Assembly: GCA_020536535.1 (NCBI GenBank)
Contig: JAHLWZ010000530.1
Span: 124,001 to 188,000 of the forward strand
Direction of reading: 5' to 3'
Length of the DNA stretch: 64,000 bases
Source: Pelomyxa schiedti
Lineage: Eukaryota > Protista > Evosea
This document shows, in pieces, positions 122-14,545 of the stretch; the stretch's first letter is position 1; every line of letters begins with the position of its first letter. The notes beneath the pieces were generated by a model, which made no database searches, was not told where the DNA came from, and saw only the letters and a program-made list of their open reading frames with translations. The position numbers and the translations under genes were made by a program.

Positions 122-209
122 CAACACCCCGCTGAGGAGATTGAACAAAATTAGTTGAAAAATCTATGGTTGTTTGAAAAGAACCAGCCACTCCTCAACA
201 ACAATTAAT

Positions 210-3200
210 TTATTGGTTTCTTACATCCAAAGTGAACAACAGGGCAGAAGAGTCCTCAACGAGCACACCAAAGTGGCTGAATTCCTTCTCTGTTGTACGG
301 CCGAAGTTCACAACGCACCTGCACCCCACCACAACAACAGGCGCGCTTCCTGTTACCTTCTTCCTCCCCATGTCTCTTACTCTTGCTTGCACTCTGTAGG
401 ATCCAGCCTGTGCCGTCTTGAGAGTGTACTCCCATGGGCCCATCCCAACCGAACTTCCTCCTGACATCCTCCCACCAATTGCAGTGTGATTGTGCCACAT
501 GCTGCAACACTCACCCGATGGTTCGGTAACCTTCATTTCAACGTCATAGTCCTCACAGTGAGCCCACATTATCACACGGAAATCGAGTTCCGGCACAGAA
601 GAAAGCCCTTCTTGATCATAGGATTGACTTGGTATTGAAGGGTTTGATGAGGCCGTATGGCAAATCAAATCCAACTTTGCACTAACCTGCAGACCAAGGT
701 TAGCCGGCTTGCACCTTGTCTCACCTGAAGCCATGGATTGCAGAACTGATACTGCTTCAGCAACAGCACCGCTGCTTCTGTCATTTCTCGATTCTTGCAT
801 TCTCATGCAAGTAATGGCAGCATGATATGAATATTGCGGCTGCAATTTTCTCAGAGAAGAAGAAGCCCTCCACGCTTTGTGAGCTTGTGTCCACATCCCC
901 AGTGCTTGGAATACTGTTCCAAGAGCACACAACGGCTGAACCTCACCAGGGAAGTGCTCCGCAATATTGCTGAGAACCCGGCATGCAGCCTCCCACTGAC
1001 CAAGTGAGGAAAGGTACAGTGCACTCCCAATGATAAACGCATAAATTGGCTGACCTATCTGAATCACATAGTTATACAGGTTTGGATACATCCGAAGCAA
1101 AGATGAAATGTCTTGGGTTCCTTGGCGTGAGAGTAAGTTGGAGCAGCTGGGAGCACACTGTGTGGCTGAAGTGAGTCTATAAGCAACAACTTTTCTCCCA
1201 AACGGGCTCTCAATCTCCATCCGGCCGTTTTGCTCTGGTACATTGCCCGCATAGCCAGGGGTAACATCGTCATCAAGACTTCTTCTCTTCAGAGGCATTT
1301 GGCTAAGCTCATCACCGAATATATCTGTCCGTTTTGCTGCGAAAGACTGTAGGTTAAGGCTACATATATGTGCGCTGGAGATGCGTGGTGCGGAAGTGAC
1401 CTGGCAATAGCTCTCATCAATTGGTAATAGACATGTTTGGATGTCAGAACCAGTGCTGGTGCTGTTACCAACAGTTCCTCTTGGAGGGGAAACAGTATTA
1501 CAACGAGACCTTTTCCCCCCTCTACGACGACTCTTTGGTTGTACTTCGGGGGGCGGCGTGATTTGCTCTCTGCTTCTTTCATGTGCTAAAAAGAATTTTT
1601 CAGCTTGGTGAAGGCTCGCTGTGTGCCATGATTTCTTTGAAAGGAAGTTTTCTTGTATTGGGAGTCGTTGTGGTTGAGGGGTGAAAACAGGCCGGTCATC
1701 AATATCCTGGCTATATCTGGCCAATAGTGCATCACTCCTTGTTGTGAAACCCACAGCACCACGCCCCAGTGAGGCTTTGTATCCAGGAGGGGGTGTTTGT
1801 GATGCCCATCGAGAAGACGGAGCTGGCATTATTGTTGGAGGATGGTAGGCTTCTGTTGTGTCAGACAACATGCAAAGAACCTCCGCATTACTAGGAAGGC
1901 TTCTTTCCTGGGGAGGACCGACATCAGACCCATCTGCAAAGTCAAATTTGTATCCTCGGCCAGAGTAGCCATACGGTTTATACTCTCCCGAATCCCGCTC
2001 ACGTGTCATTTGAGTTTCCTTGGGAGGAGAACTGGCCTCAGCCGTATCTGCCAAGTCAAACTGGAATATGCTCCCAGAATAGTCAGATGTTCGAGACTCT
2101 CCCAACCCCTGATTGCATGTCATCATTTGAGATTTCAAAAAGGAGGCAGGCTTAACCTTACTCTCACGCAGGATTGACTCAGCCGTTATCTGGATTGGTG
2201 GCAGGGCTTTATCCTTCACCCTTCTGGGAATTTGAGCAGGGGCGAAATCAGGAGGAAAGTATTTTGTAAGTGTTGGAGGTGCTTTAGGTACTTCCATTGG
2301 GAGAGCAGCAAATTGAAATGGGTAGCCTTGAGGAGAGGAGGACATTGGCAGAGGAGGCTGACCTTCCACCACCGATGACGGAATTATTCTAGATATCTTA
2401 TTGGGGGGTTCGTTGAAGTCCGTTGAAGGGATTAACAATTCCTCCCGTGAAACAAGATCTGAGTGGAAATATAATAGCTGAGGTTGTTTTGCTCTTCCAT
2501 CATATTCGTTTGAGAGCCATTTGCAGAAGTGCTTCCATAAAGTGGCTGCAACTGTTTTGGATTGAGTATTCAGTTTTTCGTTTCTTTGTTGCTCTTGATT
2601 GGCGCGCAGGTTTGTTGTTCGCCAATACTCAGCGCGAACAAAAGGCATGGAAGGTGGAGGTGGAATGTGATGCTTCAGAAATTGCTCAAGTGTGCGTAAC
2701 ACAATGAAGGAGCACTCGGGGGCACAGAGATTGTATTGTTTGCAAACATCTTTCAGAAGTTCACTCTTGGTTTGACGCAACTGCTCGATTTTCAGCATTG
2801 CCCACCTCCTTCCCAATACAATTCCGAATTGATCTTCGTTGTACATACTTTGGCTAGGGAGAGAAAATGCCACCCTCTGATCGATTCCGCATGGAGAAAA
2901 ATCGACTTGAAGAGTTCCGGGTGTGGCATACTCGTCAAACCGCCCATATATCACATGCGGGGTGCAATGGGACACTTCGGACTGCAACGCCTGTGCAGAT
3001 ACTCCTTGGAGTATAATCTTTGGATTTGCCATCCTTCCTGTCAGGCATTCTACAGCATCCGCCGCTGTGCAGTTAGATAGATCGAGGTATCTACCGTTGT
3101 TTTGATGGGCTATCTTTCGTAAAATCAGGTCACTGTACTGTTCCGTGGCAGAGCAGTCGCACAAGCAATGAGTCACTGCACCGAAAGAAAGATTCTCATC

Positions 3201-4580
3201 ATTTCCTGAAACAGGCAAAGTGTCCACTCCATCTGAGAAGAGGATCCAAGAACTGTACTCAGGTGACTTACTTCTGCACCATGTTGCGACCTGGTTCAAA
3301 TCAGTTGCACCGGAATAGGTCAGTGACGAAATCAAGTCTGCCAAGTTTTCAGGCTGCACATCAGAGGCCACGTGCCGCACCTCAATGTCGAACCTGAAGA
3401 GATCCAGCTGAGCCACATATTGCAAGGCCAAATTCTTGACCAAGTCTAGCTCAGAGGAGTGTGACGCCTGAACTCTACTGTAGGAGGTATCCCAAAGAAT
3501 GCCTATTCGAGTCAATTCTTGATTGTTGGAAGAATTATTAGATTTGAGAGCAGTGGGAACTGCAGTGCAAGCGCACATGAAGAAGTAATCATTATCTCCC
3601 ATAGATAGAAGAGGTCTTGACCACTCCACTGCAAGAATGCACTGAGGTATAGAACTCACAGAAAAGTCAAGACAATTCTCAGTCACTGCAGCTGGCAAAT
3701 CCATTGGAGATATCTTCACGGATGCTTCAGTCCAAGAGCCCCGGTGAATGAAACGTAGTGGGGAATTCACTGATGCCGGATTCACAATGGGAATTATCTC
3801 TGAGTTTGTTGAGCAATCTAAAATACAGTCCACTCGAGTGGACATCTCCAAAGACTGCAAATCCTTGTGCTCGGAAAGGTCAAACGGGAGGGCATATAAA
3901 GCCGAATTCGTAGTTCTTTCAAATCTCAGTTGCTGTGTGTACCTCACCGAAATCTGTAATCAAAAATAAGAATCAGCCTTCAAATATGTTGGTACTTTCT
4001 TATTCCTTTACACTCAATGCATTTATTATCGAAGATAATTGGTGAGTGGCTGTGACGAAAATACAAACAAACAAACAAACAAACAAACAAAACAAACCTT
4101 TGTTGGCAGAGCGGCTATTATTGGGAACACCTTGCACTCGTACACATTCGACGCGGCCACGTTCGCGGAAACCGCCGCGCCCTCCCCCCCGGCCCGGTGC
4201 TCCTCCTCGTACGCCTCCCTGGCCTCCTCCGCGTCCACCACCGCCGCCTCCCACGTCGCCCCGTCCCTCGCGTCCGTCACGCTGTACCCGCACACCGTCC
4301 CCGTGGCCGGCAGCGGCACCCGCAGCGTGCCCTCTCCCTCCCCCTCCGCCTCCGCCTGCTCCCCCGCTGGCTCTTGGTGAGCCTGCTGCTGAGGCAGCCA
4401 CGTGGTGGTCAGGCTGGTCTCGGCCGCGAGGAGGCCGACGACGCGCACCGACACACTGAGGCCAACCAGGGACATGTTGCATCGTGAGGGCGTTGTGAGG
4501 CTGAGCCTCGGTCTCTTACTGCTCATGCTCTTCATTTTAATATGCTGTTGTTGTCGTTCCACAACCGTTTTTTCTCGCAT
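210..4580 (-). CDS. VIT-VWA-(disordered insert)-TPR-DUF2135/YfaP-like protein, 2 exons
   Basis: Exon 1 (4580-4098) has a VIT signature (EGTLRVPLPATGTVCGYSV...AAVVDAEEAREAYEE...VFPI). GT-AG intron 4097-3954 joins in frame (PTK|ISVRY). Exon 2 has a VWA MIDAS-like ILWDTSYSR, GATDL and LFSDG, then TPR-like helices and a DUF2135-like C-terminus (DFRVIMW..DVEMKVTEPSGE..GGRMS..GMGPWEYTLK.A..GSYRV). Confidence 0.85.
4064..4097. repeat. (CAAA)n microsatellite at the 5' end of the intron
   Basis: Direct reading of tandem caaa units. Confidence 0.85.
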
Positions 4581-4683: not shown

Positions 4684-7329
4684 TCACCAATGATAAAGAC
4701 AAAATGAAGAGGCGTCAAGGGAGGGAGGGATGCACTTCAGGCAGTAGTCAATGTCTTGCTGTCTGTCTGTTACACTGTAGCCACCAGCTAGCTTCACTCC
4801 ACAAACGTCACATGAAAAGTCAGAGCGGATTACCTTAAACCTGTGCTGCTGCAGCGGGTGTGGGTGTAGTTCAGCACAGTTGCTGTGGCATTTGTCACAC
4901 AGGTCATACTCACATTGCTTGCATGACCAACTGCTCCCTGTGTTGACAACGCGGCCGCAAATGTGACACGTTGTGGTTCCAGGTCTGATCCAGGTGCTTC
5001 TGACAGGTGGCTCTTTTTGTACAACATCCACTGGGAATTCCAAAATTACTGCATCATTCATTTTGGTGGAAATTTCAACAGAATACAATCCAGGAGGAAC
5101 TGATGTTACAATACAAACTGCATTCCAAATGGAGCCACTTGGGCACTGCAGCCACTGCACCTGTAGTGGTGAAGTGTGAGATTTTAGCTTGAGAAACTAG
5201 CTACTTACTGTTTCAGCACCACTACGACTCATAAGCACAGCATCAACCTCTTGAGGGCCAATACACCTTCCTGACCAGTTGGAAAGGCGCAAGAAAAAAA
5301 GTACCTGTTGGTGATTGTCGATAATAGTCTGCTCCGCTATCACGTAAGGAACCACGCTTTTGAAGAGAGAATGCTTTTCAGGACCATACTTTGCAAAGAC
5401 TTCAACTTCAGTCCCAACAAGCGCAACATTCAGTAGGCTGCTGTAATCCCATCTTGTGACATAGGAAGAAGAGGGGCCTCCTTGAAAAGGGATGGTTCCA
5501 CCAGATTCACAGCTTCTTATTTCCACTTTTGGAGGTGTGTCACAAGGTGGTTCGGAACCAATCTGAAAGGAGAAACTTTTCCCGGGAGGAGAAATCAACA
5601 CTGGGATTGTATAATTCAATTCCAGAGTGGAGCCAACAGAGGCTTCAATATTTTCGGGCCCAGTCACTTTGATGATAGTTGCTCTCCTGATTGGGCCCTC
5701 AGGTAAAGGCACAATTCTGGAGAGAAATCGGTTTTGGAAATTCAGGTGGTACTCCTGAGTGATACTATTTCGGTCCCCGATTGTGTATTCTGTTTTGCAG
5801 TTGAGAAGAGAAAGCCGGGATGTACAACAATACCAATAAAACAAGTAACTTCGAGAGGGTCATCAATCCTAACGGGAGTTGCCATTCCAGTGTGCAGGTG
5901 CCTGACAGTTGCATTCGCTATCTGGGGTTTTTTTGGGTTTATTGATGCAGTTTATTGTATGAAACCGCACCACTTTTATGGTGCTCTCAGGGGAAACGTA
6001 CACCTAGTGCTGGGTGTGAATGAAACGGTTTATTGGAGTTAGAACTACTAGTTTGAAATCAACACGGAACCTCTTGGGTGAGTGAAGGAGATACGATTTT
6101 CCATCCACGTGAATATCTATTTGGGAATATTGTCACTCACTTGAGTGAAGAAGAGTTTTGGGTGCGTGCACACACCAACCCATTCTGCATCATTAAGGAA
6201 GCATTCCAACTTTTGTGTGCCAGTGTTACGTTCATGCCTGACAATAGGTGCACGGTGACACTCTGGTGGTCCATATTCAAAGGTGATGTTCCAGAATCGT
6301 TTTCCTTTGCTGTGAAGTATCACCCTGCGGTTGGGTTTTCGTGTAACTGTACGACCAGGACAGTCAAAGTGACAGCATGGCGGCGCTGTGGTGGTAGTCA
6401 TTTGTTAGTGGCCACCAAAATAGGAAAGACACACTATTTGTTGACGTCATGGTCGAGTTCCCAACGTTGTAACTTGATGGAGTCCAGCTCTTGATGGCCT
6501 TCCACGACACGCTAAAATTGTGGGGCCTAATGAAGCGCTGCTCCTCTGAGATGTATATCAGGGCACAAAAAGCTTTGTACAAAGTCTTCCACAACCCACC
6601 CCCACTGTAGGTAGGCTGGCTAATACTGACTGCAGGAGCGTCTTGGTGAGATAGGAACAAAGTATGCCACAAAGGATCAGAATCGCACACCCTCCTCATG
6701 TAACTGCAGGTGCTCGACAGCGAGAGAGCCAGCTGGACAGCCAGCCCGACGGCGCGGGAGGTGGCCCCAACCGCCTCGATCGTGAGCCTCACGGCCTCGC
6801 CCACCGCGGCCAAGTGCATGCCGTAATCCGCCCTCCAGGGCTCCTCGGAAGAATCGCCGCCGGGGGCCGTGGGTTCCGAGGAACCGGGCGAGACCGGGCC
6901 CGCTGTACGGCACTCGCGCGGCGCGACGCTCACTTGGCTGGTGGGTGGCGGGCGTTGCTGCGGGCGTTGGGACTCGCGGTAGTCGTAGTTCGGTATGAGC
7001 AGAACTGTGTCGCTTAGGTGCATGCCTGGCGATATGCGGTCTGCAAACGAGACGGTTCCCGGAGGTGCCGCGTACGCCGCGGCCGCGACGACCCACACGT
7101 CCGCGCAGGGCAGACGCGCGTACGTTGGCACTGTGACGCGTAGATGAACGAGAGGCGTGGCACCGCCGAGAAGGCCCCCTGTATCTGCTGCAGTGCTGGT
7201 GGGGGATTGTTGTCGTGTCGTGCTAATGATGTGCATAACTGGATCAAGGGGCGGAGGTTTGGGTGAAGCCTTCAAAGCAGAAAACACGAACTGTGCCGAG
7301 GTAGATTGGGTTGGGATAGTGACCACCAC
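4684..7329 (-). CDS. Multi-exon protein with an F-box-like segment and C-terminal ZZ/C1-like zinc fingers
   Basis: Colinear ORFs 6364-7329, 6117-6401, 5197-5844 and 4684-5160. F-box-like LSLSSTCSYMRRVCDSDPLWHTLF. C-terminal CHICG..WSCKQCEYDLCDKC..HPHPL and CDVCG..DIDYCLKC. Start uncertain. Confidence 0.6.
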
Positions 7330-13829: not shown

Positions 13830-14347
13830 ATGAAGGTGTTCATCGAGTACTGGTGTGTATTTGGTGTTTATTGTAGCGTCTTTACGCTGTCGTTTTTCCT
13901 CTGTCATTTGACCTCACCTTTTGCTACAGCCAAGTCTGAAACTTTCATGTTTGTACCACTTTTCCTTCATTTTCTTTGATTTCATTTTGTTACAAAACCT
14001 AAATCCCCTATCAGCCCGCCTTCCTCAGGGTAAAGGAAGAGGTAAAACACGGTCTTCATGCACAAAAACCATTTTAACTTTACACTATATAGCTCGAAAA
14101 GAGCTTCCCTGGGGTAGTGGTTATTGGAAACAAGACCGCTCCACGCACTGGGGCGTTCGAGGTTACTGATGAGAGGGGCACATTGTACTGGTCCGCATTT
14201 GATGGAGATTCTCACAACCCTAAGGTATTCCTTTCCCAGTTGCCTCTGTTTATGTTTTCCATTTACAAAAACCAAAACACCTTATCTCGAACCAAATAGA
14301 CTGGCGCTGTTTCCGCCCGCATGCGCGAGCGCGGATTCTCCTCCTAA
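13830..14347 (+). CDS. SelW/SelH-like (Rdx family) selenoprotein, 5 exons, in-frame TGA read as Sec
   Basis: Exons 13830-13852, 13930-13948, 14015-14041, 14093-14224 and 14300-14347, all with GT-AG introns, splice to MKVFIEYCQVUNFHPAFLRVKEELEKSFPGVVVIGNKTAPRTGAFEVTDERGTLYWSAFDGDSHNPKTGAVSARMRERGFSS*. CxxU (TGA 13937-13939) and the Rdx tGxFEV motif are present; SECIS downstream. Confidence 0.9.
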
Positions 14348-14480
14348 AGTGCCCTCTCTTTGTGCCCCCCTGCGTGGACTGTGCATGCTGTCATCATCAA
14401 GGTGCTGAGGCAGGTTGATTGGCCCTGTGGCTCGTTGTGCAGAGTGGAGTAGCCCGCTTCCCGTAGTCCTGTTTTGCACA

Positions 14481-14545
14481 GTGCATAGGTGATACTGATG
14501 TGCCTCAAGCGTAACAACGTCGGCACATTCCGTTGATGTTTGCAC
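14481..14545 (+). promoter_or_regulatory. SECIS element (form 2) in the 3' UTR
   Basis: Helix I gtgca/tgcac; core GTGAT(14489)...TGAT(14534); helix II actgatgtgcc/ggcacattccgt; unpaired AA; apical minihelix gcgt/acgt. Confidence 0.85.

What the first reader, a model, noticed from the sequence alone, without database searches (positions are those of the whole stretch)
1300..2280. Spliceosome-motif mosaic (candidate bait/decoy region) inside a VIT-VWA-DUF2135 protein
Seen: between the VWA module and the TPR/DUF2135 end, a disordered stretch of one exon carries back-to-back short motifs. Each resembles a conserved segment of a different spliceosomal protein (references recalled from memory). TLTKYFPPDFAPAQIPR (~2273-2223) ~ YJU2/CCDC94 N-terminus VLNKYYPPDFDPSKIP. 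RVKDKALPPIQITAESILRES (~2222-2158) ~ CRNKL1/Clf1 N-terminus KVKNKAPAEVQITAEQLLREA. GYSGRGYKFD (~1970-1941) ~ DDX46/Prp5 GFSGKGFKFD. PPPGYKASLGRGAVGFTTRSD (1793-1731) ~ PRPF6 N-terminus [45 protein letters not shown] (~1650-1578) ~ CWC25/CIR N-terminus LNLKKSWHPQTLRNVEKVWKAEQ. PPPEVQPKSRRRGGKRSR (~1556-1502) ~ PRPF31 PAPLDGQRKKRGGRRYR. LQSFAAKRTDIFGDE (~1352-1308) ~ SF3A1/Prp21 LKQLAERRTDIFGVE. Established: these factors act at different spliceosome stages and are normally separate genes; the VIT-VWA protein ITIH4 traps proteases through a bait region; yfaP lies in the E. coli alpha-2-macroglobulin locus. Inference: this may be an integrated decoy that senses or traps viral/symbiont effectors or proteases targeting the spliceosome, or a multivalent spliceosome regulator built from captured gene fragments. 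I know of no described protein with this design.
Basis: partly seen in the sequence, partly recalled or inferred. Interest (0 to 1): 0.92.

Follow-up and report, generated by a model that had tools for sequence, protein, structure and literature searches.

The report
Amoeba scaffold protein displaying splicing-factor mimics
In the anaerobic amoeba Pelomyxa schiedti, a cytosolic copy of a bacterial-type scaffold protein carries a long floppy loop holding short, selectively preserved copies of the most conserved bits of at least six splicing-machine proteins. Sister genes carry actin, Rab, SNARE, ESCRT or other splicing pieces at the same spot, which looks like an undescribed family of built-in baits or decoys.

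Summary
The window lies in Pelomyxa schiedti. ORF 210-3947(-) is the large exon of Pelo_6792, a VIT-vWA-TPR-DUF2135-type protein. Its roughly 400-470-residue insert is predicted disordered and carries motifs matching PRPF6 (Pfam PRP1_N, E 3e-6), YJU2, a Cir_N/CWC25-type protein and SF3A1; these four beat every one of 2000 shuffles against the amoeba's own genes. CRNKL1 is supported by PDB hits. The PRP31-like match is weaker (p about 0.01). The DDX46 resemblance could not be verified.

Synonymous sites between the motifs and the own genes are saturated, so the copies are old and kept by selection. DNA contigs of three runs span the region, and RNA contigs cover parts of it.

Paralogs carry other cargo at the same site:
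- splicing pieces: DHX8, SLU7, SNW+BBP-KH, G-patch+MFAP1
- other host proteins: CHMP1B+Rab, synaptobrevin+Rab, actin, tubulin, DnaJ

Bacterial homologs have signal peptides and no insert.

Best reading (about 0.45, untested): an integrated bait/decoy panel on a MIDAS-bearing scaffold, analogous to ITIH4's bait region and plant NLR integrated decoys. Main rival: docking motifs for normal regulation.

The scan had already noted sister genes of this family on other DNA of this genome. I found no published description.

The parts
4098..4535 (-). Exon 1 of Pelo_6792: start codon at 4535-4533, N-terminal part of the VIT domain. There is no signal peptide, and a KRPR basic patch sits near the start.
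   Evidence: Sequence read. The public product P0001 begins MKSMSSKRPR and joins ...PTK|ISVRY. Pfam VIT matches at P0001 63-151, E 6e-7. VIT exon hit. Bacterial homologs have signal peptides and the amoebal ones do not.
3954..4097 (-). GT..AG intron of 144 nt between the VIT exon and the large exon.
   Evidence: Sequence compared with P0001. It contains a short repeat at which read contigs break.
210..3953 (-). Large last exon (stop codon at 210-212). It holds the end of VIT, vWA, a beta/helical anchor, the mosaic insert, TPR and a DUF2135-like sandwich.
   Evidence: ORF. It is 99% identical to P0001. DNA contigs of 3 runs span 150-4053 without a break.
3033..3515 (-). vWA-like alpha/beta domain with intact MIDAS residues: WDTSYS at 3477-3494, then GATD and FSDG.
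   Evidence: AF2 pLDDT is 84-92 for model residues 100-260. The MIDAS motifs are conserved in amoebal and bacterial members.
2484..2933 (-). Conserved 'anchor' just before the insert (SFIVLRTLEQFLKHHIPPP...AEYW... and a long helix).
   Evidence: Alignment A2. The profile finds 8 strong and about 9 weaker loci in the genome. The long helix spans model residues 390-433.
1269..2477 (-). Variable insert (mosaic cassette), about 400 aa. It is predicted disordered, with short helices at some motifs.
   Evidence: Boundaries from paralog alignments. pLDDT is below 50 over ORF aa 483-954. Bacterial homologs lack it.
2223..2300 (-). YJU2 N-terminus-like motif (LTKYFPPDFAPAQIPR).
   Evidence: Against the own YJU2 exon: score 66 against a shuffle maximum of 53, p 1e-5. 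PDB hit to YJU2 residues 6-24. Conserved in C469.
2157..2222 (-). CRNKL1/Clf1 N-terminus-like motif (RVKDKALPPIQITAESILRESK).
   Evidence: PDB hit 9l5r_J residues 6-32. The colinear C469 motif matches human CRNKL1 at E 0.003. Block score 64 between the paralogs.
2109..2156 (-). In-frame 48-nt GT..AG stretch that the public gene model removes as an intron. Unverified.
   Evidence: P0001 compared with the ORF and the DNA. No RNA contig covers it.
1932..1973 (-). 'YGYSGRGYKFDFAD' cassette, said to be DDX46/Prp5-like. A second degenerate copy lies at 2046-2096.
   Evidence: Conserved in C469 (score 56) and present in P0021. The source protein is not verified.
1692..1793 (-). PRPF6 N-terminus-like motif (PPPGYKASLGRGAVGFTTRSD...QDIDDR).
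   Evidence: Pfam PRP1_N 1-32, E 2.9e-6. PDB PRPF6 residues 12-48, E 0.01. Own-gene shuffle p 3-5e-4. An RNA contig covers 1713-1866.
1575..1649 (-). Cir_N (CWC25/CIR-type) N-terminus-like motif ([25 protein letters not shown]).
   Evidence: 10/10 identical to the own Cir_N gene on C514, p 2e-5. It also matches the own C427 gene, p 2e-5. A helix is predicted there.
1502..1556 (-). PRP31-like basic motif (PKSRRRGGKRSR), possibly a nuclear-localisation signal.
   Evidence: Against the own PRP31 (PKKRRGGKRY): p 0.01. An allele carries a 2-residue insertion just before the RRRGGKR core.
1314..1355 (-). SF3A1/Prp21-like motif (NLQSFAAKRTDIFG).
   Evidence: Against the own SF3A1 (NLYHFARKRTDIFG): 11/14 identical, p 6e-4. 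An RNA contig covers 1208-1515. The paralog C469 carries a DHX8 piece at this place instead.
648..1109 (-). TPR-like helical repeat.
   Evidence: AF2 model helices 64-217. The PDB profile finds TPR proteins. Foldseek and VIA hits are to TPR proteins, including T3SS class II chaperones.
219..587 (-). C-terminal beta-sandwich homologous to DUF2135 (YfaP-type) domains.
   Evidence: AF2 strands 238-360, pLDDT about 90. It aligns with the DUF2135 regions of bacterial homologs. The Pfam model itself does not reach threshold on this protein.

Best explanation
Pelo_6792 belongs to an Archamoebae-specific expansion of a scaffold acquired from bacteria (VIT - vWA with MIDAS - helical anchor - TPR - DUF2135 sandwich).

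Shown here:
- The scaffold has lost its signal peptide.
- It has gained, at one fixed site between the anchor and the TPR, a long flexible loop carrying copies of conserved host proteins or of their most conserved peptides.
- In this gene the cargo is a panel of short motifs from at least six spliceosomal proteins that act at different stages (U2: SF3A1; tri-snRNP: PRPF6 and PRP31; NTC: CRNKL1; step 1: YJU2 and a Cir_N/CWC25-type protein).
- The copies are old and maintained by purifying selection.

Inferred, not shown:
- The loop is an integrated bait or decoy. A foreign factor (an effector, protease or modifying enzyme from an intracellular bacterium or a virus) that recognises these conserved host peptides would engage the loop instead of, or as well as, the real target.
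- The MIDAS-bearing vWA and the TPR would then hold or report it, in the way cleavage of ITIH4's bait region leads to MIDAS-dependent trapping of the protease.
- The basic PRP31-like and KRR elements would bring the protein into the nucleus.
For: - The motifs are real and match the organism's own genes far better than shuffles do.
- Codons for identical residues are mostly different (16/57 identical; [10 protein letters not shown] is 10/10 aa but 21/30 nt). Similarity is therefore kept at the protein level and not by recent conversion.
- The motif blocks are conserved and colinear between paralogs C530 and C469, while the linkers diverge and one cassette is swapped: SF3A1 in C530, DHX8 in C469.
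- Paralogs carry other host cargo at the same site: SNW+BBP-KH, SLU7, G-patch+MFAP1, CHMP1B+Rab, synaptobrevin+Rab, actin, tubulin, DnaJ. From general knowledge, this list resembles the target range of intracellular pathogens' effectors.
- A panel drawn from many spliceosome stages is hard to explain as one docking event.
- The integrated actin has altered phosphate-binding loops (judged by eye).
- In P0021 the BBP-KH insert is about 75% identical to that of P0002, while the scaffold is about 29% identical. The cargo is held close to the real protein.
- The VIT family is expanded to about 50 or more loci.
- MIDAS is intact in all members checked.
- ITIH4 sets a precedent for a bait region after VIT-vWA, with MIDAS-dependent trapping (PMC7793589).
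- The host harbours several intracellular prokaryotes (PMC10579272 abstract).
- The loop is disordered and so accessible.
Against: - No functional data exist.
- No recognisable signalling, death or enzymatic output domain is present. There are no hits to PADLOC defence models.
- No effector or protease that targets these spliceosomal peptides is known to me.
- The synaptobrevin+Rab architecture is shared with Mastigella, and synonymous sites are saturated. The cargo is therefore ancient and stable, not rapidly turning over as many arms-race loci do.
- Some cargo may still be functional: the KH domain keeps its GxxG loop, and the permuted Rab keeps its G motifs. That fits working modules as well as decoys.
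- The DUF2135 fold gave no functional clue.
Confidence: 0.45

Rival explanations
1. Docking adaptor or regulator. The motifs are working short linear motifs that bind the same partners as in the source proteins (for example Prp8, DEAH helicases or snRNA). They would tether the VIT-vWA-TPR scaffold to spliceosomes or to free spliceosomal subunits as part of normal physiology: an assembly chaperone, sequestration, quality control, or a global brake on splicing. Sister genes would do the same for actin filaments, ESCRT-III polymers, SNARE bundles and Rab partners.
For: - Purifying selection acts on the motifs.
- Helices are predicted exactly at several motifs, as expected for binding elements.
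- Some cargo may be functional: the KH GxxG loop, a G-patch, and permuted Rab domains with all G motifs.
- The architecture is ancient and shared with Mastigella.
- NLS-like elements flank the cassette.
Against: - The motifs come from factors of mutually exclusive spliceosome stages (general knowledge of the splicing cycle), so one protein cannot use them all in a single complex.
- About 50 or more scaffold genes with cargo from unrelated machineries would need many separate housekeeping roles.
- The family is restricted to Archamoebae among the best 150 of 2675 homologs, which is unusual for core regulators.
- The actin cargo shows changed nucleotide-binding loops.
Confidence: 0.3
2. Dominant-negative mimic used offensively or for self-control. 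The protein would display host-like peptides to jam conserved machines, either in engulfed eukaryotic prey or competitors, or in a subset of the amoeba's own nuclei or compartments in this multinucleate cell.
For: - The motifs are the most conserved segments of their source proteins and match human proteins almost as well as the amoeba's own, so they would act across species.
- The bacterial ancestors of the scaffold are secreted.
Against: - The amoebal proteins have no signal peptide or other export signal.
- There is no evidence of delivery.
- The gene is expressed at low level in a single-cell transcriptome taken without any stated prey context.
Confidence: 0.1
3. No function. The resemblances would be chance matches in low-complexity sequence, or the gene would be an assembly or annotation chimera or a decaying pseudogene.
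For: - Single-cell MDA assemblies can be chimeric (general knowledge; the genome source is PMC8887013).
- Individual PDB E-values for YJU2 and Clf1 (1.6 and 2.4) lie at the noise level seen elsewhere.
- Pfam detects only one of the seven motifs.
Against: - The shuffle tests.
- All PDB hits are spliceosomal for two paralogs and all are ESCRT-III for a control paralog.
- The ORF is intact at 1245 aa.
- Contigs of three runs, including a second allele with an in-frame indel, span it.
- RNA contigs cover it.
- The motifs are conserved between paralogs and in other organisms.
Confidence: 0.03

Closest known systems
Bacterial VIT-vWA-TPR-DUF2135 proteins (YfaP-type C-terminus; Pfam PF08487 + PF09906)
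   Same: They are homologous over the whole scaffold (E down to 1e-19 by phmmer; 2675 profile hits). Domain order and MIDAS residues are the same.
   Different: The bacterial proteins have signal peptides, are about 1000 aa long and have no cargo between the anchor and the TPR. Their function is unknown, and no paper in the searchable library mentions DUF2135.
ITIH4 and inter-alpha-inhibitor heavy chains
   Same: A VIT + vWA(MIDAS) module is followed by a long, variable, protease-susceptible 'bait' region. Cleavage there leads to MIDAS-dependent trapping of the protease (PMC7793589).
   Different: ITIH4 is a secreted vertebrate plasma protein. Its bait is not built from copies of host proteins. 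The amoebal protein has no ITI heavy-chain C-terminal domain hit and has TPR+DUF2135 instead. Cleavage of the amoebal loop has not been tested.
Integrated decoys of plant NLR receptors (for example the RRS1 WRKY domain and the RGA5/Pik-1 HMA domain)
   Same: This is a paralogous family in which a fixed position holds copies of diverse host proteins that are typical effector targets (concept from general knowledge; family pattern).
   Different: There is no NB-ARC/NACHT, LRR, TIR or CC domain. The cargo here is a mosaic of 10-25-residue peptides from many proteins, not one folded domain. No genetics link it to immunity.
Alpha-2-macroglobulin bait region, and the E. coli yfaS-yfaP locus
   Same: Both involve a flexible multi-site bait loop on a large scaffold. 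DUF2135 is the YfaP domain, and from my own knowledge E. coli yfaP lies in the alpha-2-macroglobulin operon. Pfam DUF2135 rings only in E. coli among the control genomes.
   Different: No macroglobulin or thioester domains are present. The operon link was not tested here.
NLRP1/CARD8 'tripwire' linkers that mimic viral protease cleavage sites
   Same: A disordered linker mimics sequences that a pathogen enzyme is built to recognise (general knowledge).
   Different: The scaffold and output are unrelated. The amoebal motifs mimic host proteins, not viral polyprotein sites.
PRPF6/Prp1 (Pfam PRP1_N)
   Same: The first 32 positions of PRP1_N are matched above the curated threshold.
   Different: Only 32 of 144 positions are present and there are no HAT/TPR repeats of PRPF6. 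The genuine PRPF6 gene lies on another contig and has an intron inside the motif.

Membership tests
VIT-vWA-TPR-DUF2135 scaffold family (bacterial type) | N-terminal VIT domain | tested here: met
   Pfam VIT E 5.9e-7, 30.1 bits against a cut-off of 26.5, on P0001 63-151.
VIT-vWA-TPR-DUF2135 scaffold family (bacterial type) | vWA fold with MIDAS (DxSxS...T...D) | tested here: met
   WDTSYS, GATD and FSDG are conserved with the bacterial homologs. A confident alpha/beta model was obtained. Pfam vWA models do not reach threshold on this protein.
VIT-vWA-TPR-DUF2135 scaffold family (bacterial type) | TPR repeats followed by a C-terminal DUF2135 domain | tested here: met
   TPR is shown by the profile and the model. 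The C-terminus aligns with bacterial DUF2135 regions; the invariant and near-invariant columns of A5 include Pro, Gly-Glu, Gly-Gly, Ser, Gly-x-Gly-Pro and Glu. Whole-protein homology E is 1e-19. The Pfam DUF2135 model itself is below threshold here.
VIT-vWA-TPR-DUF2135 scaffold family (bacterial type) | Signal peptide / extracytoplasmic location | tested here: not met
   Eleven of the 12 bacterial homologs inspected start with a signal-peptide-like hydrophobic N-terminus. P0001 and 8 other amoebal members do not (judged by eye).
Inter-alpha-trypsin inhibitor heavy chains (ITIH) | VIT + vWA followed by the ITI heavy-chain C-terminal domain; secreted | tested here: not met
   VIT and vWA are present, but there is no ITIH C-terminal Pfam hit and no signal peptide.
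Inter-alpha-trypsin inhibitor heavy chains (ITIH) | Cleavage in the region after vWA triggers MIDAS-dependent protease trapping | not testable with these tools
   This needs biochemistry. The precedent is PMC7793589.
NLR receptors with integrated decoys | NB-ARC/NACHT nucleotide-binding domain plus LRR or similar sensor | tested here: not met
   There are no such Pfam hits on P0001 or P0002. The weak NACHT/AAA hits in P0018 lie on GTPase P-loops.
NLR receptors with integrated decoys | An integrated domain that copies an effector target, varying among paralogs | tested here: inconclusive
   Cargo that copies host proteins and varies among paralogs is shown. That these proteins are effector targets in this organism is not shown.
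PRPF6/Prp1 splicing factors | Full PRP1_N domain plus HAT/TPR repeat array | tested here: not met
   Only profile positions 1-32 of 144 are matched. The genuine gene is elsewhere in the genome.
Alpha-2-macroglobulin family | Macroglobulin domains and thioester | tested here: not met
   No Pfam hits.
Known anti-phage defence proteins (PADLOC) | Match to any PADLOC model | tested here: not met
   Zero families for P0001 and for two bacterial homologs.

The most novel reading that the evidence does not exclude
Archamoebae would possess a previously unknown class of intracellular surveillance proteins. These are bacterial-derived VIT-vWA-TPR-DUF2135 scaffolds whose loop displays integrated baits copied from the host's most conserved machines: the spliceosome, actin, tubulin, Rab, SNARE, ESCRT-III, chaperone and ubiquitin components. 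They would neutralise or detect effectors of intracellular bacteria or viruses by MIDAS-dependent capture after the bait is bound, cleaved or modified. The window's gene would be the first case of a multi-epitope decoy for the spliceosome, which would imply that the spliceosome is a regular target of microbial effectors in protists.
Probability: 0.35. Interest if true: 0.95.

Novelty: categorically new. Interest (0 to 1): 0.85.

Why it matters
If the bait reading is right, this is an innate-immunity architecture independent of NLRs. It would have evolved in amoebae, the natural training ground of intracellular pathogens. Its cargo list would then be a ready-made catalogue of which host proteins, and which exact peptides, microbial effectors attack, with the spliceosome unexpectedly among them.

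If the regulator reading is right, it is a new way for one scaffold family to address many cellular machines through copied peptides.

In either case it shows three things. A secreted bacterial scaffold was domesticated in a eukaryote. Short conserved peptides of at least six spliceosomal proteins can be kept for a long time outside their native proteins. And these peptides, several with no assigned function, are autonomous functional units worth testing.

Tried and rejected
- Pfam on the insert alone finds only PRP1_N. The Saf4_Yju2, Cir_N, Prp31_C and PRP21_like_P profiles did not pick up the window in whole-genome scans. Motif support for those therefore rests on the own-gene shuffle tests.
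- A first shuffle test against six-frame 3-kb loci was underpowered. I replaced it with an exon-level test.
- DDX46: PDB phmmer with the C469 motif gave only an unrelated hit. For the same reason only 8 of about 17 anchor-type loci, and none of the about 50 other VIT loci, were read.
- A possible SF3B1-like 'SRWD..P' element (about 1767-1841) got no PDB support and is not claimed.
- The word-based search with the mosaic alone found no second mosaic protein in 5.8e9 sequences. Only PRPF6 orthologs appeared, at E about 3.
- The last word-based family search was swamped by actin words and added little.
- DUF2135 fold: Foldseek and VIA-align returned only TPR matches, so nothing can be said about the sandwich.
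- PADLOC and NCBIfam gave nothing useful.
- Literature searches for DUF2135, YfaP, 'integrated decoy' + amoeba, and VIT in Archamoebae genome papers found no description.
Searches used the single-exon ORF by reference and the public product P0001 that a tool returned.
Full report
ORGANISM AND GENE

The window is contig C530 (124001-188000) of a 52-Mb eukaryotic assembly. The 1245-aa minus-strand ORF at 210-3947 is 99% identical to 'hypothetical protein Pelo_6792' of Pelomyxa schiedti (P0001, 1377 aa). P. schiedti is an anaerobic archamoeba whose genome came from single-cell sequencing (PMC8887013).

The public model adds one upstream exon at 4098-4535, with the start codon at 4535. That exon holds the first part of a VIT domain, and a 144-nt GT..AG intron follows it. 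The model also removes an in-frame 48-nt GT..AG stretch at 2109-2156. I could not check that intron because no RNA contig covers it.

I searched the large exon by reference and joined no exons myself. P0001 is the database product that a tool returned.

ANATOMY

Pfam finds VIT (E 6e-7) and PRP1_N (E 3e-6) on P0001. Alignment with paralogs and bacterial homologs and two AlphaFold models give this order:
- VIT.
- A confident vWA-like alpha/beta domain with intact MIDAS residues (WDTSYS, GATD, FSDG).
- A small beta module and a conserved helical 'anchor' (window 2484-2933).
- About 470 residues with pLDDT below 50 (ORF aa 483-954). Short helices appear only at the CRNKL1-like motif, the tail of the PRPF6-like motif, the Cir_N-like motif and the SF3A1-like motif.
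- A TPR-like repeat (648-1109).
- A C-terminal beta-sandwich (219-587) that aligns with the DUF2135 domain of bacterial homologs.

THE MOTIFS

A phmmer search of the insert against all PDB sequences at E<=10 returned five sequences, all spliceosomal. They were human and yeast PRPF6 N-termini (best E 0.01), the YJU2 N-terminus (residues 6-24) and a Clf1/CRNKL1-type N-terminus (residues 6-32). Hits at E of about 1-2 are at the noise level for this tool.

I therefore fetched the amoeba's own PRPF6, YJU2, Cir_N, PRP31 and SF3A1 genes by Pfam scans of the genome. I compared each motif-bearing exon with the insert using 2000 residue shuffles:
- YJU2: score 66 against a shuffle maximum of 53 (Gumbel p 1e-5).
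- Two Cir_N genes: p 2e-5 each. [10 protein letters not shown] is 10/10 identical to the gene on C514.
- SF3A1: p 6e-4.
- The two PRPF6 exons: p 5e-4 and 3e-4.
- PRP31: p 0.01.

From my own knowledge, the PRP31-like basic stretch coincides with PRPF31's nuclear-localisation element, so it may simply be an NLS.

The PDB search with the better-preserved C469 copy found nothing related, and I could not fetch the amoeba's own DDX46. The cassette is nevertheless conserved: it occurs twice in this gene, once in C469 and once in P0021.

AGE AND SELECTION

At the DNA level, codons for residues identical between a motif and the own gene are mostly different (16 of 57 identical). [10 protein letters not shown] has nine nucleotide differences, all synonymous. 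The copies are therefore old, and the similarity is kept at the protein level. This is not recent capture or gene conversion.

The own PRPF6 and Cir_N genes have introns within or directly after the motif, and the mosaic has none. That fits an origin from processed transcripts but does not prove it.

CONTIGUITY AND EXPRESSION

Contigs assembled independently from three runs of one sample span 150-4053 without a break. One of them is a second allele, with ten coding substitutions and an in-frame 6-nt insertion just before the RRRGGKR core.

A single-cell transcriptome run has contigs at 674-1515, 1713-1866 (across the PRPF6-like motif), 2836-3316 and 3408-3606, with no splice joints. Contigs cannot exclude DNA carry-over, so expression is supported but not proven.

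PARALOGS

Searching the genome with the flanks, with an anchor profile and with Pfam VIT shows 8 strong and about 9 weaker anchor-type loci, and about 85 VIT matches at 50 or more loci. The members I could read carry different cargo at the same site:
- C469: the same colinear set (YJU2, CRNKL1, the GxGFKFD cassette, PRPF6, Cir_N), but with a DHX8/Prp22 segment (residues 449-512, E 5e-4) where the window has SF3A1. All nine PDB hits are spliceosomal.
- C184 = P0002: a SKIP/SNW fragment (E 2e-16) plus a BBP/SF1 KH domain (E 4e-23).
- C828: a SLU7 fragment (Pfam E 8e-15; PDB E 2e-10).
- C815 = P0019: a G-patch plus an MFAP1 fragment.
- C954 = P0018: a near-complete CHMP1B (E 3e-5) plus Rab-like domains.
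- P0025: synaptobrevin plus Rab.
- P0053 and P0045: actin.
- P0100: a tubulin fragment.
- P0099: DnaJ and a weak E2 hit.
- C292: only Q/M/P-rich low-complexity sequence.

The C954 result also serves as a method control. The same PDB search on a similar-length insert gave 9/9 ESCRT-III hits and no spliceosomal hit.

BEYOND PELOMYXA

A profile search of 1.84e9 representatives found 2675 homologs. Most are about 1000-aa bacterial proteins with VIT, TPR and DUF2135, a signal peptide and no cargo.

Among the best 150, long inserts occur only in Pelomyxa, in Mastigella eilhardi transcripts and in three metagenomic eukaryote-like proteins:
- The Mastigella transcripts have the same synaptobrevin+Rab architecture as Pelomyxa P0025.
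- P0020 carries an SNW fragment.
- P0021 carries a BBP-KH domain plus a GKGFRFDD cassette.
- P0047 carries a WH2 motif.

In P0021 the KH cargo is about 75% identical to that of P0002, while the scaffold is about 29% identical. A word-based search with the mosaic alone found no second such mosaic. The next hits were genuine PRPF6 proteins at E of about 3.

INTERPRETATION

Shown:
- A real, conserved, accessible loop displays peptide copies of at least six spliceosomal proteins.
- The same loop position holds other host proteins in sister genes.
- The scaffold is of bacterial type, has lost its signal peptide and keeps MIDAS.

Inferred: what the display is for.

I favour a bait/decoy function (0.45) for four reasons:
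- The panel samples factors from mutually exclusive splicing stages.
- The family's cargo list resembles the usual targets of intracellular pathogens' effectors.
- The cargo is held close to the genuine proteins while the scaffolds drift.
- The only VIT-vWA protein with a known mechanism of this type, ITIH4, uses a variable region after the vWA as a bait, followed by MIDAS-dependent trapping (PMC7793589).

Pelomyxa is also permanently colonised by intracellular prokaryotes (PMC10579272).

Against this reading:
- There is no output domain.
- No effector is known to attack these peptides.
- The cargo is ancient and stable, not fast-evolving.
- Some cargo may still be functional.

The main rival (0.30) is that the motifs are working docking elements that tether the scaffold to spliceosomal partners for housekeeping regulation. 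An offensive or dominant-negative mimic (0.10) and artefact or chance (0.03) are less likely.

COMPARISON WITH KNOWN SYSTEMS

By homology the protein is a member of the VIT-vWA-TPR-DUF2135 scaffold family, but it lacks that family's signal peptide. It is not an ITIH, an NLR, an alpha-2-macroglobulin or a PRPF6, because defining features of each were tested and not met (see Membership tests). It may work like an ITIH4 or alpha-2-macroglobulin bait, or like an NLR integrated decoy.

I found no paper describing this family.

EARLIER NOTES OF THIS SCAN

After I had formed this reading, the scan's notebook showed that other agents had noted sister genes on other pieces of this genome. These include a spliceosome-mimic cassette, ESCRT-III plus GTPases, a dead ubiquitin-E2, a Qc-SNARE, Snf7+PH, a mu-homology domain, eIF5A and a PARP-VIT-vWA. 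These notes are unchecked, apart from the ESCRT/Rab gene, which I examined independently. They agree with the family picture and extend it.

LIMITS
- The DUF2135 fold remains unassigned.
- No binding prediction was possible, because no partner sequences were available.

Noticed in passing
P0018 aa 905-1085; P0025 aa 1040-1205; P0035 aa 865-1030 (family members, not in the window): The integrated Rab-like domains are circularly permuted. They start at switch I (TIGADF/TIGVDF), run through the G3, NKxD and SCK motifs, and end with beta1 plus the P-loop (GDSGVGKT). The same permutation occurs in Pelomyxa and in Mastigella.
   Followed up: partly
window 2109-2156 (-): The public gene model removes an in-frame 48-nt GT..AG stretch as an intron. 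It contains no stop codon and lies between the CRNKL1-like motif and the first GxGFKFD-like copy. No RNA contig covers it.
   Followed up: partly
window 1531 and 330-3841: A contig of run X4 is a second allele of the gene. It has 4 synonymous and 6 non-synonymous substitutions and an in-frame 6-nt insertion that turns PKSRRRGGKR into PKTGSRRRGGKR.
   Followed up: yes
L001 (G000:C808) and L037 (G000:C514): The genuine PRPF6 gene has an intron between GLGRG and ATGFTTRSD. The genuine Cir_N gene has one right after KKSWHT. The mosaic copies are intron-less.
   Followed up: partly
P0053 aa 676-1040: The integrated actin aligns over almost the full length of Acanthamoeba actin. However, its phosphate-binding loops are changed (DNGSG to DAGHG, DSGDG to DIGDD) and its D-loop is shortened, which suggests a nucleotide-dead mimic. 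This was judged by eye from one alignment.
   Followed up: partly
L075 (ENA ERZ21831265 ctg81923l) = P0021: An unidentified eukaryote in a metagenome has a family member whose BBP-KH cargo is about 75% identical to that of Pelomyxa P0002, while the scaffold is about 29% identical. It also carries a GKGFRFDDTE cassette.
   Followed up: partly
G000, about 50 or more loci: Pfam VIT gives 85 exon-level matches in this 52-Mb genome, a very large expansion. Only a minority of the loci could be read.
   Followed up: partly
P0190 (Glandiceps talaboti 'PARP4-like'): A hemichordate VIT-vWA PARP4-like protein is listed with 14-3-3 and actin Pfam hits. This could be a gene-model fusion or a parallel case of cargo on a VIT-vWA protein.
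   Followed up: no
window 4684-5160 (-) and 5197-5844 (-): The neighbouring ORFs appear to belong to another gene. The first is Cys/His-rich with CxxC...CxxC spacing, reminiscent of ZZ-type zinc fingers (judged by eye).
   Followed up: no
window 13830-14545: The scan's notebook lists a first-reader note of a SelW/Rdx-type selenoprotein gene with a SECIS element in this window. I did not examine it.
   Followed up: no
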